DNA of 64,000 nt, from assembly GCA_907165135.1 (NCBI GenBank), contig OU015567.1, forward strand, positions 11,098,001-11,162,000. The letters are read 5' to 3'. The position numbers and the translations under genes were made by a program. Below are positions 43,552-49,444 of this stretch, piece after piece. Origin of the DNA: Oikopleura dioica. Its lineage: Eukaryota; Animalia; Chordata. The notes under the pieces were generated by a model. The model searched no databases. It had not been told where the DNA came from and was given only the letters and a program-made list of their open reading frames with translations. The first letter of the stretch is position 1, and each line of letters opens with the position of its first letter.

Positions 43552-46500
43552 ATGTGTCCAAACGGAAACGCAAGTCAAGGTAATGTGCATATTTTTTGAA
43601 AATCTGCAGTTAAATATCTCGATAATAGATGATGTCATTCTAGTGACTGGACTGTGCAGGTCTATTTTAGGGCGAAGTGATAACTTATCGCTGATACATA
43701 GAGCTTAGCTCTTCTTTCATCAGATGAAAGATTTTATACAGTAGTTAGACTGCGCATTTCTGGTGTCCTCTTCCATGATTTCAATTATAAAAAATTTCAG
43801 CAACCGCCGAATCGGAATACATAAGGCAACATGTGATCAACGAAGCTATGCATTTTGCTCGACAACAGGTAGGAATGTTTGATTTTCCAAAGAAGGAACT
43901 GAGACAGTAGATTCAAAAGGTGACTCGGGATTTGAAGTCGATCCATTCTGGCAAAGAATTTTCACAAAAATAGTTAACTGGTATCAAATCTGACATTTCG
44001 GGAACGGGTAGACGCATTTCTAGGTGTGAAAATTCAAGGCATGTTTTGGGTTCATTTCTCATGTGATTGAAGATAACTGATTAAGAAATTTTATACCGCA
44101 AATGTATATAATTATTTGAATTTATGTAAAAAGGCCATTTCCCATTATGAAAGTGATCATAATTGAATTTATTGAATGTCAAGTGTCGCTCAGCATAAAT
44201 AAAATTCGCCGAAATTACGTCAGAAGTGTACTGCTAATTGTTGGTGCTATAAACCTGATCCCATAGAGTTAAATTCACTATTGACGTCTATTTATTGTGT
44301 TGAATCCGGTCATTATACGGTCATTTTTGCCAAGTTTTTTTCAAACTTGTGCTTGCTTCTTTTTAAATTTGAACGCTCGGGCCTCAGAATTTATGTCGCC
44401 ACTTTTATGAAATAAGCAAAAATTGACGTCAAACAAACCGTGAAAAGTAATTAACAATCTGTCTGAAGCGCTAAAAATAGAAACTCGGAAAATCGTACAC
44501 AATGAAAAACGATAAAGACCACCTTGACCGGAAGCATCATAAGTCTCGTTAATTTATTTTAAATAATAAATCCTATGATAACAAAAGAAACGTCAGCGCT
44601 ATTTTTAGGCTTTACTGTCCATGATCGAACAACATACGAACCGGCAGAACATGCTCGAAAACCAGAATGCCAGACAAAAAGAACTTGAAGCAATCAGGTT
44701 TTGAAATAATCTCAAATTTTTTAACAATCAATTAGGGCAAAAGAAACTGAACAGCAGTCTGCAAATGCTTCAGCCGCTGTAAAACGAAGATTACAAGGGA
44801 ATTGGATAGAATCTTTTAATCTAAAGTTTCTTCGAAAAAAGTTCATTCGATATCCGTATAAAAGAGGTTATTCTCGCTAAACGGAAGATGATACCTACGA
44901 ATGGCGAAGATTTCCCTCTTCGCAAAGCTAGTAAGTGACGCAGATCAGCCCAAAATAGTTACACCCTTTCTAATCTCGTGGTCTTAATTGGGCATCTTTG
45001 TGACATCAATGCTCAATAATCGGATTTAGTGTCGGAGCCTAATCTGAAGTTGCGATCGAAGCTGAGAACTAAGGTTGACCGGAGACACTCGCCTATGCTA
45101 ACAAGGAAAACCGGCGCGAACGAGATCTTGAATGAGCGCATTCGAAGAAAAATCTCAGGTAAAACGAAAGCTTTAAAATAAAACTCATACGAGTCCCCCA
45201 GCAACTGAGTCTCCTACATCTGCCTCGCCAACATCTACTAGCTCGAGTACAATCTATCCAAGCACATCATCTTCTGCCGCCACTGCTTGTTCTTCCTCGG
45301 GAATGTTTTCTTCCCCAAGTCTTCCTAACATTGCCGACATCGCTTCTGGACATCCTCACAGTCACCACCCACCGAACAGAAAAACAAGCCATGACGAGTC
45401 CAACATGGCTTCAAAAAGCCCCTATCTTATCCAGGCTCTTCTTGCGAGTCAAGTCGAACGGAATCGCTTCTATCGCGCGAATTCTGTACCCACGCTTGGA
45501 GAAGACATCAAAAACTGGGCATCTTCTAGGCGAGATCCTTCTCAATATTCTGCATCTTTTGGGCCCGGATTCACGCTGCCAGGACAAAATGGAGAACTTG
45601 GGGGCTTTAGACAGAATCCACAGATGATACCAAATCTTAGTCAACTGAGTCTGAACTGTAATCGATTCCAAATTGAACGATCAAGCAGACTGAATTCTTA
45701 TCAAACACCACTTGAGCGAAGAACTGGTTTCTTTGCGGAAAGAAATAATGATCACGTTGAGGCATTTGAAAATATATTTTGGTCGATGGCGGAGAGATCT
45801 CTTCTTGACAAGGTAAAATTATAAAGTGTATCTCTTTTAAATCTTTCTTTCAGATTGAGCCTCGTCTTCCAAGTAAAGATGAATTGCGTTTAGTCCACTC
45901 GGAGAAGCTTATTTCTTCGAAATTCTCAGTCTCGCCGCTTGCAATGGAAAAACAGGAATCATCCCAGTTCCATAGTCTCTCGGTAAATCTCCAATTAAGA
46001 CAAGATCTTCATTTTTCTTAGGGTATCGTTGACACAGTCGTCGCGGTAGGAGTCGATCAGCTAAGAAACGGCTTTGTTTTCGTCAGCAATTCTGGTGTTC
46101 AAGCCGAAAAGGACTTCTCGCCCGATTTTCCCTTCAACTCTATCGCGATCGCCGTAAAATCATTGCTTGATCAGCGACCAAACTTCAGACTTCTCGTCCT
46201 CGATCTTGCCGAAACCCATGCCAGCGGCACTCAAAGCATCTTCTACTCCGATCCTAACGTCCTGACAGTCTCATTTCATAGAAGTCAGGGAACCCCAGAG
46301 AAGATCGAAGAAATCGGGAGAGGTACTGGATTGGGCTTCAATCTCAATGTTCCGCTCCCTGACAATGTTAGTGATGATGACATCAAAGTCGTAGCTGATG
46401 TTGTTCTTCTACCACTGATGGTTGAGTTTGAACCTGAGGTAACGCTTGTACTCTTCCTTGATTTCAAAGGCATTTCAGCTGGTCATTGTAAATACAAACT

Positions 46501-46977
46501 TCTCCAATTACTTTGAAAGAACTTCACCTGAACGTAAGACTGAAAAAAATATCGATTCGAATCTTATACGAAAACTTAGTTTATGGGTGGTTAATGGGTG
46601 AAATTTCACAAATCGCCGCACAAAAAGTCGTTGTCATCTTCAATGGCCTTGAAAGTCCCGCACTACCAGCTCGCATTGCCTTCAATATGCGAACAGCAGT
46701 TTCCCAAAAGGAAGCTTTTCAGAAGTTAAAACGCAAACCTTTTTTACGCGATGAAGTTCGGGAAACCATCATTTCCGTTATTCACACTCAAGGTACTTTG
46801 AACCCCCCCTGGTTTGGTTTACCTTAAGTTTAGGGAAATACTGGCCTTGTCTTCAGAGATCGCGGCTGTTTCTTGAGCAGCTTATTGATTATTCACAGGT
46901 TCGTAAGCGATAGAGTATTTTGAATAATTTATTTTTAGGAGATCGAGTCCGACGACGAGAATATAAAAGTCGACTGA
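43552..46977 (+). CDS. HDAC4: Class IIa histone deacetylase (HDAC4/5/7/9-like) with a degenerate catalytic domain; start codon uncertain
   Basis: MEF2-binding SANASAAVKRRLQEVI; FPLRKA|MSEPNLKLRSKL; SSPSLPNI; RANSVP; deacetylase-fold remnants LRNGF, FNSIAIAVK, SGTQSIFYSDPNVLTVSFHR, EIGRGTGLGFNLNV, KYWPCLQR. Confidence 0.88.
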
Positions 46978-49444
46978 CTTTTCTTATCTTGCCTGCTTTG
47001 AAAGTTCAAAATTCCGTATTCACTTATTATTTTAAATAAATTTCATTCCTGGTGCGTTCGGAACAAAAAATAAAGCGGCAAAATTGTACCTGTCTTATAA
47101 GATTATCCAGCAGATAAGCTTGGAAAGAATGCGGTCAGTGCTGGACCACAAATGTCGACCGCTGATAGCTTCTTATGCTACAGATTAGTCCACGGAATCG
47201 AGCCAAAATAGTAAGATAATAAACTCGGTAACTGCATTCAACACTATTTTGTCTGTTAAAAAGTCACGGAGATGACTGTTTTTAGGTCAGAAGATCGTTG
47301 ATCAATATTCGTTTGGAATTTGTTCTCCCTAGTTTTTATGAGATCACAATTACGTATTCAGATAGAATCGATGCATAAATACCACGACAAATGGGCCAGT
47401 TCACCATGTTTTCTTTCGTCGCGAACTTTGGATTTTCCTTGAATATTTTTCTCGTGATTGTCCAAGGCCATCTTCTTTGTTGATTTGGGCAAATTTCACG
47501 CGCGGCGGGCTCAACTTGAAGGTTTATTATGCTGTGGGACGAATTCGCGCCGCAGGTTCCTCCCACATCAAAACTGGACACAGACATCCATCGTCAAATC
47601 AATTTAGGAGACAATTAATTATTCCTTTGAAATATCTGAAAACTGGACCTCGAGTACAGTGCCTCTCGGGCACCTGCGAATTAGGAACTCGAAAATCGAT
47701 TCTAGCAATAAGAAAAAATAATAGGCACTTCATTAAAAATCCTAATTCTGGACCGACTTAAAAAATCTATTAGCAGAAAATTTTGACGAAAGGTCAAAGG
47801 TTCATGTGAAGATTGAGGAAACAGTAGAGTCCTGTAAATTGACAGGTAACATTTTAACAGTAGTGCGACCTTTCGATGCTCATTATTGGCGTTGGTAATT
47901 TTGATTAATTGCGGCGAGCGAGGGTCTCAGAGTCTCCCGTTTATCGTTGAGAAATTGGCCTAGTCAAGTTGTTTTGAAAAATAGATCATGTTCAAAGGAA
48001 CTGGTCGACTGGAGGCTTCGTCAATCAGCAGAATTCAAAACAATTTGAAAAGATTAAAAAAATTCTTTGAAATCTTTTGTCAAATGATAAATTTAAACCG
48101 TTGAAAATATAAGTCAGAAATTCTTATCAAAAACATCATGAGGTTAGGAGGCTCCACGAGCGAGTTCTATTTTGTTGAGGATAAAAAAATGGAGCTCAAA
48201 TCGAGAATTTTAAATCTCCGTTTGCGGTGGACTCAAGCTGGAGATAAAAAATTTCTTGCGGGTTTGGCAATGGAGGCGAAATGCATACCGCAGTTTTTAG
48301 TTTTTACATTTTCAGTGACAGGAGACATTCATGAACTTCTATTTGCAAAATTCTTGAAACTGATCTAGTCTGATCGTCCGATCGAGACTAAAACTTTTAT
48401 CTGCATTTTTTGATGCTGCGGCTCAGCTCAAATAGCTAAAATAAAAATATCATGCAATTTGATGATAATTTACAACTTTACCATTTTACGCCCTTTCACG
48501 TTGAAACAGCTGCGCCGCTTCCATCCAGCCGCATGTGACATTGTGTGCCCAAACGTAAATCTAATCTGAGGGAATTTCCTAGACGGTCGATCATTCTCAG
48601 AATTTGTCCAGGGAGATTTTCGCTGATTCAAGGGCTTTAGCGAACTTTTGAGCTGGGATTTGGAAGGCGGAAACGAGCAGGATTTGAAGCCTTTGCCAAA
48701 TACGCTGGTTGATAAGGAGATCAAGGGCGACGAAGGGGTTTTATGAGGTTTCGGTGATTAGGGCAGGGATCATTCGAGTGACCATATTTGCGCAGCGGGC
48801 TGGGAAAAGGCTGCGGTCACCGGCTCACCATTTCTTTCTGCCACATATTATCGACACGTTGATACATATTTATTAAGCGAAATAGCCCTTTGATCCCCGC
48901 CTTGTTTACGACTTGGAGAGGTGTTCCTTGCATTTTTAGGCACACAAATGATTCCAATTCTTCTATTGATGCTTTGATCGATTCTTAGATGCTAGTGTTT
49001 AATGAAGAACAGTTTGGATTTTAAATTAATCACCCAATTAGTCCACCCTCGCCACTTAAACTTAGATCAATACCTAAAGCTTCTACTAAACCTATTATCA
49101 CAATCACAAGTTCCAAAGAAAACACCTTTTTGAATTTATAAAATTAAAAAAGGGAAGAGATTTCGCTTTCCAAGCGAGTTCTTGACCGCAAACTGCTCTG
49201 ATATTTGATACGACCGCAGGAATGTCTTAGCTTGGAATTTTTGCGGTGCTAGGGGTAGTGACAGCTGGAATTTCTTGGAGGGAACTCATATAACACCTTT
49301 TATCATGCATTTTTACTTGTTAAATTTAGAGTTTTTCTGAAAAACTTTTTCAAATTGAATAAAGCAAGATTTTAATTTTCTAAGGTGGCTTTAAAATACT
49401 AGATTTTACATAATAATATTTTCTTATATTCGAATACGATTTAA

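What the first reader, a model, noticed from the sequence alone, without database searches (positions are those of the whole stretch)
45716..46750. Class IIa HDAC that has become a complete pseudoenzyme but keeps its regulatory half
Compared with HDAC4 as recalled, every catalytic feature is replaced. RPPGHHA is SNSGVQA (46085-46105; both His lost). DWDVHHGNGTQ is DLAETHASGTQ (46202-46234; Zn ligands D840 and H842 become A and T). SGFDA is LDFKG (46457-46471; third Zn ligand D934 becomes K). LEGGH is FNGLE (46639-46653). The class-IIa structural-zinc CTC...C motif is also absent. The frame is nonetheless intact, and the MEF2-binding helix, the RKxxSEP and RANSVP 14-3-3 sites and SPSLPNI are conserved. 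Vertebrate class IIa enzymes are weak but keep the Zn site, so a Zn-free scaffold would be a further step. Inference: a MITR-like, signal-controlled MEF2 (possibly Runx) co-repressor whose dead domain may read acetyl-lysine or bind NCoR.
Basis: partly seen in the sequence, partly recalled or inferred. Interest (0 to 1): 0.8.

Follow-up and report, generated by a model that had tools for sequence, protein, structure and literature searches.

The report
Zinc-free dead class IIa HDAC, Oikopleura
The tunicate Oikopleura dioica has one class II histone deacetylase gene, which keeps its MEF2-binding and 14-3-3 control region while its deacetylase domain has lost every catalytic and zinc-binding residue yet stays expressed and strongly conserved, so the folded domain must have a non-enzymatic job.

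Summary
Window 44621-46977 (+) holds an 11-exon, 620-codon class IIa HDAC orthologue in an Oikopleura dioica-complex genome.

- **N-terminal half:** it keeps the MEF2-binding helix, RKAMSEP, the NLS-like block, SPSLPNI and RANSVP.
- **HDAC-like domain:** Pfam PF00850 hits it, and HDAC7/HDAC4 are the best fold matches. The His-His dyad is V-Q. Zn ligands D840, H842 and D934 are A, T and S. H976 is E. The Phe-Phe loop and the whole Cys3His structural-zinc module are deleted.
- **Correction:** The real third motif is TNFSN, in a 55-nt exon.
- **Splicing:** a metatranscriptome contig from a sister lineage confirms the junctions from exon 5 to exon 11.
- **Selection:** the gene is not a pseudogene. 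All exons and splice sites are kept in sister lineages, and the dead domain has dN/dS of about 0.05.
- **Other larvaceans:** more distant lineages lost different catalytic residues but share D934S.
- **Rest of the genome:** the only other HDAC-domain loci are HDAC1/2-, HDAC3- and HDAC8-like. A MEF2 gene with an intact HDAC-binding groove is present.
acetyl-lysine reading and canonical NCoR/SMRT docking are unlikely, because the pocket and 15 of 21 SMRT-contact residues are gone.

Public records call it only 'histone deacetylase'. I rate it a new variant of a known kind.

The parts
44621..44697 (+). Exon 1 (ATG; MIEQHTNRQNMLENQNARQKELEAI, Gln/charged-rich N-terminus)
   Evidence: ORF and conserved exon in L008/L016. 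The e1/e2 GT-AG junction is seen in RNA reads of a sister lineage.
44736..44797 (+). Exon 2; 44767-44797 is the first half of the MEF2-binding helix (ASAAVKRRLQ)
   Evidence: 20/20 residues identical in L008. Aligns to HDAC4 AVASTEVKMKLQ.
44798..44864 (+). Non-canonical GG-AG intron (GA-AG in L008 and L016) with base-paired ends
   Evidence: RNA reads join ...TTACAAG to AGGTTATTC (joint 44786->44862 with 8 substituted letters). Terminal stem in three lineages.
44865..44930 (+). Exon 3: second half of the MEF2 helix (E)VILAKRK, then EDFPLRKA
   Evidence: HDAC4 contact residues V171, L175, F178 and V179 (PMC10954479) correspond to V, L, V and I.
45030..45158 (+). Exon 4: (M)SEPNLKLRSKLRTKVDRRHSPMLTRK. 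Together with the end of exon 3 this gives the first 14-3-3-type site, RKAMSEP, and the NLS-like basic block.
   Evidence: tblastn with HDAC4: 69% identity over 29 residues. The e3/e4 and e4/e5 junctions are seen in RNA reads.
45202..45812 (+). Exon 5: Ser-rich linker, SPSLPNI (45312-45332), RANSVP 14-3-3-type site (45474-45491). The HDAC-like domain starts at about 45716 (RTGFFAE...).
   Evidence: RANSVP is also kept in the distant larvacean loci L010 and P0156.
45854..45982 (+). Exon 6: IEPRL...ELRLVHSEK...; no Cys, and the structural-zinc segment is missing
   Evidence: HMM alignment to class IIa positions 65-101. The junction is confirmed in transcript L015.
46022..46438 (+). Exon 7: core of the HDAC fold. 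SNSGVQA at 46085-46105 (His dyad lost). DLAETHASGTQ at 46202-46234 (D840A, H842T). The Phe-Phe loop is deleted after FHR.
   Evidence: Pfam PF00850 E 2.7e-21. HDAC4 is the best single-domain PDB sequence hit. Class IIa HMM 94 bits. Residue map.
46439..46478 (+).
   Evidence: A 2-nt indel against L008 falls here. It is spliced out in transcript L015.
46479..46533 (+). Exon 8 (55 nt): LVIVNTNFSNYFERTSPE. TNFSN at 46494-46508 replaces SGFDA, so D934 becomes Ser.
   Evidence: Conserved in L008, L016 and L009, and as SAGFSS in L010. Present in transcript L015. Skipped in the public gene models.
46580..46792 (+). Exon 9: (L)YGWLMGEISQIAAQKVVVIFNGLE...; FNGLE at 46639-46653 replaces LEGGH (H976 becomes Glu)
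   Evidence: Junctions confirmed in L015.
46834..46898 (+). Exon 10: (G)KYWPCLQRSRLFLEQLIDYSQ. The KYWxCLQR motif is shared with class IIa HDACs.
   Evidence: The e9/e10 join is seen as a loose end, and the e10/e11 GT-AG joint is seen directly, in RNA reads.
46939..46977 (+). Exon 11: EIESDDENIKVD and TGA stop (46975-46977)

Best explanation
This is the single class IIa (HDAC4/5/7/9-type) gene of Oikopleura dioica.

Its N-terminal half keeps the parts that in other animals make a signal-controlled co-repressor. These are an amphipathic helix that docks on MEF2, a basic nuclear-localisation block, and two RxxSxP sites of the kind that kinases phosphorylate to recruit 14-3-3 and drive export.

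Its C-terminal half still folds as an HDAC (arginase-type alpha/beta) domain but cannot be a zinc deacetylase. The catalytic His-His dyad, all three catalytic Zn ligands, the transition-state Tyr/His position, the Phe-Phe substrate channel loop and the class IIa structural-zinc module are all replaced or deleted.

- **Shown here:** orthology, loss of the residues, expression, correct splicing, retention of the fold (by prediction) and strong purifying selection on the dead domain.
- **Inferred:** the protein works like MITR, as a phosphorylation-gated MEF2 co-repressor or adaptor. The dead domain is kept as a structural or protein-binding module with a partner other than the canonical SMRT/NCoR rim contact.
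For: - **Domain identity:** Pfam PF00850 hits exon 7 (E 2.7e-21) and the spliced sister-lineage protein (3.5e-24). By PDB sequence search HDAC4 is the best single-domain hit. BLASTP against HDAC4 gives 29% identity, E 3e-30.
- **Fold:** the AF2 model of the spliced domain has pLDDT 88.6 and pTM 0.89. The top 17 Foldseek hits are HDAC7/HDAC4, TM 0.78-0.80.
- **Residue map:** H802V, H803Q, D840A, H842T, D934S, H976E. C667, C669 and C751 are deleted and H675 is N. F870, F871 and L943 are deleted.
- **Class IIa N-terminal motifs:** SEPNLKLRS...RRHSPML is 69% identical to HDAC4. ASAAVKRRLQ(E)VILAKRK, SPSLPNI and RANSVP are present. The MEF2-contact positions named in PMC10954479 are kept or conservatively replaced.
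- **Partner gene:** a MEF2 gene with D63, L66, L67, Y69 and T70 intact lies on the same chromosome.
- **Gene structure and expression:** all 11 exons, phases and splice sites are conserved in L008 and L016. Transcript contig L015 lacks six introns exactly at the predicted junctions. RNA-seq reads of a sister lineage show four junctions directly.
- **Selection:** between L008 and L016 the dead domain has dN 0.028 and dS 0.53, so omega is 0.053 over 323 codons. The linker has 0.12 and the N-terminus 0.035. Between the window and L008 the domain has pN 0.096 against a saturated pS of 0.77.
- **Only class II copy:** both PF00850 and HDAC4 as queries find the same four loci in the genome. The other three are HDAC8-, HDAC3- and HDAC1/2-like.
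- **Relaxed active site:** other larvacean lineages lost different catalytic residues, and position 842 varies T/K/H within the O. dioica complex.
Against: - No binding or activity was measured. The MEF2, 14-3-3 and co-repressor roles rest on motif conservation alone.
- No RNA from the window's own lineage was available. Reads were under 90% alike, so its exons 6-9 are supported by conservation and by a sister-lineage transcript, not by its own cDNA.
- The domain's branch is about seven times the median length. A free tree therefore does not place it in class IIa, although a constrained class IIa clade is not rejected and even scores better.
- The AF2 model was driven by an alignment of real HDACs, so the fold match is partly expected.
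- Only two of the three vertebrate 14-3-3 sites are recognisable.
Confidence: 0.78

Rival explanations
1. The dead domain still works the way the vertebrate domain is proposed to work without catalysis: as an acetyl-lysine reader, or as the dock for SMRT/NCoR-HDAC3 at the rim of the former active site.
For: The fold is retained and the domain is strongly constrained. An HDAC3-like gene exists in the genome. Reader and SMRT-dock roles are discussed for vertebrate class IIa domains (PMC12383505, PMC4498904).
Against: The acetyl-lysine channel is dismantled. F870, F871 and L943 are deleted, P799/P800 are N/S, and H802/H803 are V/Q. Of 21 HDAC4 surface residues required for SMRT SRD3c binding (PMC4498904), only G801, A804, F812, H843 and G846 are kept; T760 aligns to Ser. 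The class IIa-specific ones, C667, C669, C751, D759 and F871, are all deleted. No GPS2_interact (NCoR/SMRT) domain was found in the genome (weak).
Confidence: 0.1
2. The domain has no partner of its own. It is kept only as a structural part of the protein, for example to present a C-terminal export signal, to mask the N-terminus, or for stability and oligomerisation.
For: In vertebrates the export signal lies at the C-terminal end of this domain (established knowledge). The conserved C-terminal helix KYWPCLQRSRLFLEQLI is nearly invariant across lineages. The conserved motifs are mostly core-fold motifs such as FNSIAIA, GTQxIFYSDPNVL and GRGTGLGxNxN.
Against: An omega of 0.05 over 323 codons is tighter than expected for a mere spacer. 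MITR shows that a class IIa N-terminus can work with no domain at all. Nothing here tells this reading apart from a new binding function.
Confidence: 0.3
3. The domain keeps some enzymatic activity with a different chemistry or metal site.
For: Strong constraint on the domain. H843, G801 and the GTQ motif are kept.
Against: All three Zn ligands, both general-base His residues and the Tyr/His position are gone. Position 842 varies T/K/H between close lineages, and different larvaceans lost different residues, so the site is unconstrained. The domain has one Cys and six scattered His, so no replacement metal cluster is evident.
Confidence: 0.04
4. The locus is a decaying pseudogene or an annotation artefact.
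For: Loss of every catalytic residue. About 80 residues are deleted relative to HDAC4.
Against: The 620-codon frame is intact. Eleven exons and all splice sites are conserved in three or more lineages, and exon indels are in multiples of three. Identity by codon position is 0.88/0.92/0.48. Omega is 0.05-0.07. Spliced transcripts exist.
Confidence: 0.01

Closest known systems
Vertebrate and invertebrate class IIa HDACs (HDAC4/5/7/9; e.g. P0105 = HDAC4)
   Same: The N-terminal architecture is the same: MEF2-binding helix, DFPLRKxxSEPNLKLRS block, SPSLPNI, RxxSxP sites. The C-terminal HDAC fold ends in KYWxCLQR. These proteins give the best sequence and fold matches.
   Different: All ten class IIa proteins recovered keep PGHH and DxDxHH, and nine of them keep an EGG[Y/H/F] motif. 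Here the dyad, the three Zn ligands, the Tyr/His position, the Phe-Phe loop and the structural-zinc module are gone, and the domain is about 80 residues shorter.
MITR/HDRP, the HDAC9 splice form without a deacetylase domain (established knowledge)
   Same: It is a class IIa N-terminus acting as a MEF2 co-repressor with no deacetylase activity of its own. This is the closest functional analogue.
   Different: MITR lacks the domain altogether. Oikopleura keeps a folded, strongly conserved dead domain, and this is the only product type seen from its only class IIa gene.
Pseudo-deacetylase domain of HDAC10 (class IIb; known from the zebrafish HDAC10 structure, e.g. PDB 5td7; own knowledge)
   Same: An HDAC fold that has lost its catalytic and Zn residues and is kept as a structural module.
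   Different: It sits beside an active catalytic domain in the same chain and belongs to class IIb. Here the dead domain is the only HDAC fold in the protein.
Public Oikopleura dioica records P0154 (NCBI unnamed protein product) and P0155 (UniProt Q676B0_OIKDI, 'histone deacetylase')
   Same: The same gene in the Atlantic-type lineage. Their motifs match locus L016, and P0154 is 89% identical to the L015 transcript product.
   Different: The automatic models have a wrong N-terminus: they miss exons 1-2 and so half of the MEF2 helix. They skip the 55-nt exon 8, or run into an intron. Their names imply an enzyme, and nothing in them marks the dead site.

Membership tests
Class IIa HDAC (HDAC4/5/7/9 orthology group) | N-terminal amphipathic MEF2-binding helix | tested here: met
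   ASAAVKRRLQ(E)VILAKRK aligns to HDAC4 167-183. Contact residues V171, L175, F178 and V179 correspond to V, L, V and I (PMC10954479). Binding itself was not tested.
Class IIa HDAC (HDAC4/5/7/9 orthology group) | 14-3-3 phospho-serine sites and basic NLS block (RKxxSEPNLKLRS...RRxSP) | tested here: met
   RKAMSEPNLKLRSKLRTKVDRRHSPMLTRK is 69% identical to HDAC4 over 29 residues. RANSVP is a second RxxSxP site. Only two of the three vertebrate sites are recognisable.
Class IIa HDAC (HDAC4/5/7/9 orthology group) | C-terminal Hist_deacetyl (PF00850) domain with class IIa as nearest relatives | tested here: met
   PF00850 at 76.6 and 86.1 bits against a cut-off of 27.9. HDAC4 is the top single-domain hit. 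HDAC7/HDAC4 are the top fold matches.
Class IIa HDAC (HDAC4/5/7/9 orthology group) | Domain phylogeny places it inside the class IIa clade | tested here: inconclusive
   In the free tree the query sits alone on a 4.55-long branch. A tree constrained to a class IIa clade has a log-likelihood 12 units higher, AU p 0.71.
Class IIa HDAC (HDAC4/5/7/9 orthology group) | Class IIa-specific structural zinc site (C667, C669, H675, C751) | tested here: not met
   The three Cys columns are gaps and H675 is Asn.
Zinc-dependent lysine deacetylase (functional enzyme) | Catalytic Zn ligands Asp-His-Asp (D840, H842, D934) | tested here: not met
   A, T, S in the window and G, K, S in L015.
Zinc-dependent lysine deacetylase (functional enzyme) | His-His charge-relay dyad (H802, H803) and transition-state Tyr (His in vertebrate class IIa, H976) | tested here: not met
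   V, Q and E.
Zinc-dependent lysine deacetylase (functional enzyme) | Measured zinc content and deacetylase activity | not testable with these tools
   Needs recombinant protein.
SMRT/NCoR-docking class IIa domain | [quoted passage not shown] | tested here: not met
   5 of 21 are kept and one is a conservative change. 15 are replaced or deleted, including all of the class IIa-specific C667, C669, C751, D759 and F871.

The most novel reading that the evidence does not exclude
In larvacean tunicates the class IIa HDAC domain was turned, before the sampled lineages split, into a zinc-free protein-binding module with a new, lineage-specific partner. MEF2 repression there would run without any class IIa-linked deacetylase recruitment through the known SMRT/NCoR rim contact. 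This would be a natural separation-of-function allele, showing what the class IIa fold does when enzymology, zinc and the canonical co-repressor dock are all removed.
Probability: 0.35. Interest if true: 0.75.

Novelty: new variant of a known kind. Interest (0 to 1): 0.6.

Why it matters
Whether class IIa HDACs need their feeble catalytic site at all is an open debate (review PMC12383505). The rival views are acetyl-lysine reader, scaffold for HDAC3-SMRT, and pure signal transducer.

Oikopleura offers a natural experiment. An animal's only class II HDAC has lost the catalytic zinc, the structural zinc, the substrate channel and most of the SMRT-contact rim. Yet selection keeps the folded domain as tightly as it keeps the MEF2 and 14-3-3 half.

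This points to a conserved non-catalytic role of the fold that could be found by partner screens in a tractable, tiny-genome chordate. The findings also correct public gene models that call the protein an enzyme and miss two functional pieces, half of the MEF2 helix and exon 8. Finally, the genome's zinc-dependent deacetylase set appears reduced to class I.

Tried and rejected
- **RNA reads.** The three bulk RNA runs come from a divergent lineage: every read was under 95% alike. Coverage of exons 6-9 was therefore almost nil, and only the N- and C-terminal junctions were seen. The single-cell run gave no reads, so it is no test.
- **Large representative search with exon 7.** It returned no full-length close relative, only fragments (P0051, P0088) and ordinary HDACs.
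- **The search for related loci with an 8-row larvacean alignment.** It failed because no stretch was conserved enough. A 3-row alignment worked but added only two close loci among 80, the rest being generic HDACs.
- **Free maximum-likelihood tree of the domain.** Uninformative because of the very long branch, so I relied on the AU test and the N-terminal motifs.
- **MAFFT addfragments overlay of all exons on full-length class IIa proteins.** It misplaced parts of the long linker exon. I used it only for the short conserved motifs and redid the domain by HMM and on the L015-anchored alignment.
- **PF15784 search for NCoR/SMRT.** No hit. I treat this as inconclusive.
- **Rfam and tRNA scans of the conserved 3' flank.** Nothing found.
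- **Complex prediction for the MEF2-HDAC helix.** Not run. Both partners are split by introns and no contiguous natural reference holds them.
Rejected as intronic.
Full report
**What is there.** The window comes from a 64.3-Mb, 19-contig genome with tiny introns. Public proteins named Oikopleura dioica are 89% and 94% identical to a sister-lineage transcript of this gene, and earlier notes of this scan reach the same species assignment.

On the + strand between 44621 and 46977 I resolved an 11-exon gene of 620 codons:

| Exon | Coordinates |
|---|---|
| e1 | 44621-44697 |
| e2 | 44736-44797 |
| e3 | 44865-44930 |
| e4 | 45030-45158 |
| e5 | 45202-45812 |
| e6 | 45854-45982 |
| e7 | 46022-46438 |
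| e8 | 46479-46533 |
| e9 | 46580-46792 |
| e10 | 46834-46898 |
| e11 | 46939-46977 |

The model rests. I never joined them for a search or a fold.

**Check of the observation.**
- Exon 7 hits Pfam Hist_deacetyl (E 2.7e-21). HDAC4 is its best single-domain match among solved structures (71 bits).
- SNSGVQA (46085-46105) aligns to RPPGHHA. DLAETHASGTQ (46202-46234) aligns to DWDVHHGNGTQ. FNGLE (46639-46653) aligns to LEGGH.
- One reading is wrong. LDFKG (46457-46471) lies in a 40-nt GT-AG intron (46439-46478). The orthologue L008 differs there by a 2-nt indel, and a spliced transcript removes it.
- The true counterpart of SGFDA is TNFSN (46494-46508) in a 55-nt exon, so D934 is Ser.

A column-by-column map on an alignment anchored by HDAC4 (P0105, whose numbering is human + 4) gives the following:

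| HDAC4 residue | Role | Window |
|---|---|---|
| H802, H803 | catalytic His dyad | V, Q |
| D840, H842, D934 | catalytic Zn ligands | A, T, S |
| H976 | Tyr/His position | E |
| C667, C669, C751 | structural Zn ligands | deleted |
| H675 | structural Zn ligand | N |
| F870, F871, L943 | acetyl-lysine channel | deleted |

The domain is about 80 residues shorter than HDAC4's. It holds one Cys, so no replacement metal cluster is apparent.

**Class IIa identity.**
- tblastn with HDAC4 finds SEPNLKLRSKLRTKV-DRRHSPMLTRKTG (69% identity over 29 residues), SPSLPNI, ASAAVKRRLQ and KYWPCLQR.
- RNA reads show that a non-canonical GG-AG intron (44798-44864) joins ...VKRRLQ to (E)VILAKRK. This restores a complete MEF2-binding helix.
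- The four hydrophobic MEF2 contacts of HDAC4 are V171, L175, F178 and V179 (PMC10954479). Here they are V, L, V and I.
- RKAMSEP and RANSVP are RxxSxP sites of the 14-3-3 type.
- The genome has a MEF2 gene (C5:8734703) whose HDAC-binding residues D63, L66, L67, Y69 and T70 are unchanged.
- A free tree cannot place the domain, because its branch is 4.55 against a median of 0.63. Forcing it into the class IIa clade gives a better likelihood and is not rejected (AU p 0.71).

**Real gene or relic.**
- Metagenome contigs L008 and L016 carry the whole orthologue. Every exon, phase and splice site is conserved, and exon indels come only in multiples of three.
- L015 is a 1328-nt transcript contig, 98-100% identical to L008's exons. 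It lacks six introns exactly at the predicted junctions, including e7|e8.
- RNA-seq reads carrying the same species label, but from a divergent lineage, show the e1/e2, e2/e3, e3/e4 and e10/e11 joints. Loose ends match e4/e5 and e9/e10.
- Between the window and L008, synonymous sites are saturated (pS 0.77) while pN in the dead domain is 0.096.
- The closer pair L008-L016 gives unsaturated estimates:

| Region | dN/dS |
|---|---|
| dead domain (323 codons; dN 0.028, dS 0.53) | 0.053 |
| linker | 0.12 |
| N-terminus | 0.035 |

The pseudogene reading is therefore excluded.

**Fold.** I used the natural contiguous transcript product (L015:223-1248) with 63 HDAC domains as its alignment. AlphaFold2 gives pLDDT 88.6 and pTM 0.89. 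Foldseek ranks HDAC7 and HDAC4 catalytic domains first, with TM 0.78-0.80 and E about 1e-24. The alignment of true HDACs helps this result, so it shows that the sequence is compatible with the fold. It is not independent proof.

**Context in the genome and in relatives.**
- Both PF00850 and HDAC4 as queries find only four loci in the whole assembly. Beside this gene they are an HDAC8-like, an HDAC3-like and an HDAC1/2-like locus. No second class II gene and no HDAC6-, HDAC10- or HDAC11-type locus was seen.
- More distant larvacean sequences carry the same gene in other states of decay:

| Source | His-dyad motif | Zn-ligand motif | Third motif |
|---|---|---|---|
| L010 | RPGGSHAE | DWDETHANGTQ | SAGFSS |
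| P0156 | RPGGAQAE | GWDEHHSNGTQ | not covered |
| L011 | RPGGAHAE | SFDQQQAKGLQ | not covered |

- D934S is shared by L010 and the O. dioica complex. P0156 also lacks the CxC part of the structural-zinc module (L010 could not be fully assessed). Loss of function therefore probably predates their split, and the other active-site residues then drifted independently.
- Within the O. dioica complex, position 842 is T, K or H.

**How it probably works.** Shown here: orthology, dead and zinc-free site, expression, splicing and constraint. Inferred: a phosphorylation-gated MEF2 co-repressor or adaptor of the MITR type, with the dead fold kept for a non-catalytic role.

The acetyl-lysine channel is dismantled. 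Of the 21 HDAC4 surface residues needed for SMRT binding (PMC4498904), only five are kept. No GPS2_interact domain of NCoR/SMRT type was detected, which is weak evidence.

Two readings remain open. The domain may have a new partner, or it may serve a purely intramolecular or export-signal role.

**Comparison with what is known, and novelty.** All ten class IIa proteins recovered here keep PGHH and DxDxHH, and nine of them keep EGG[Y/H/F]. The literature calls vertebrate class IIa enzymes 'pseudoenzymes' only because of the Tyr-to-His change (PMC12383505). A class IIa domain with no zinc site at all goes a step further. Its nearest analogues are MITR, which has no domain, and the pseudo-deacetylase domain of HDAC10, which I cite from my own knowledge.

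Public records name the Oikopleura protein 'histone deacetylase' (Q676B0_OIKDI) or leave it unnamed. Their models miss exons 1-2 and exon 8. Full-text searches found no paper that treats this gene.

I rate it a new variant of a known kind, with interest 0.6.

Noticed in passing
G000:C1:9495492-9496175, C1:6647051-6648053, C5:9828442-9830150: Apart from the dead class IIa gene, the whole assembly shows only three HDAC-domain loci: HDAC8-like, HDAC3-like and HDAC1/2-like. No HDAC6/10 (class IIb) or HDAC11 (class IV) type locus was detected, so the zinc-deacetylase set seems reduced to class I.
   Followed up: partly
window 44798-44864; L008:276-372; L016:2716-2818: The e2/e3 intron is non-canonical (GG-AG here, GA-AG in two sister lineages). 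In all three lineages its ends pair into a terminal stem. This agrees with earlier notes of this scan on stem-closed non-GT introns.
   Followed up: partly
window 44511-44540: A 30-nt block about 80 nt upstream of the start codon is 30/30 identical to L008, while introns are about 59% identical. A conserved polypyrimidine-AG sits 12 nt before the ATG. This could be a 5'UTR, trans-splice or regulatory element.
   Followed up: no
window 47008-47205: The 3' flank just after the stop codon is 86-90% identical to L008 in most 50-nt bins (74% in one), higher than the coding exons (77%). It has no long ORF, no Rfam family and no tRNA. It is an unexplained conserved non-coding element.
   Followed up: partly
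P0154, P0155 (public O. dioica proteins): The public gene models of this gene start in spurious upstream sequence and miss exons 1-2, so they lack half of the MEF2 helix. They also skip the 55-nt exon 8 (P0154) or read into an intron (P0155).
   Followed up: yes
L009:15-395: The metagenome contig L009 is chimeric. A bacterial peptidase M20-like reading frame is fused at the shared peptide EEIG to the Oikopleura HDAC exon.
   Followed up: no
G000:C5:8734703-8734801 (L012); C2:4247741 and C2:4249320 (L013, L014): There is one MEF2-type MADS-box gene with a fully conserved MEF2 domain. Two SRF-like MADS-box exons lie in tandem about 1.6 kb apart.
   Followed up: partly
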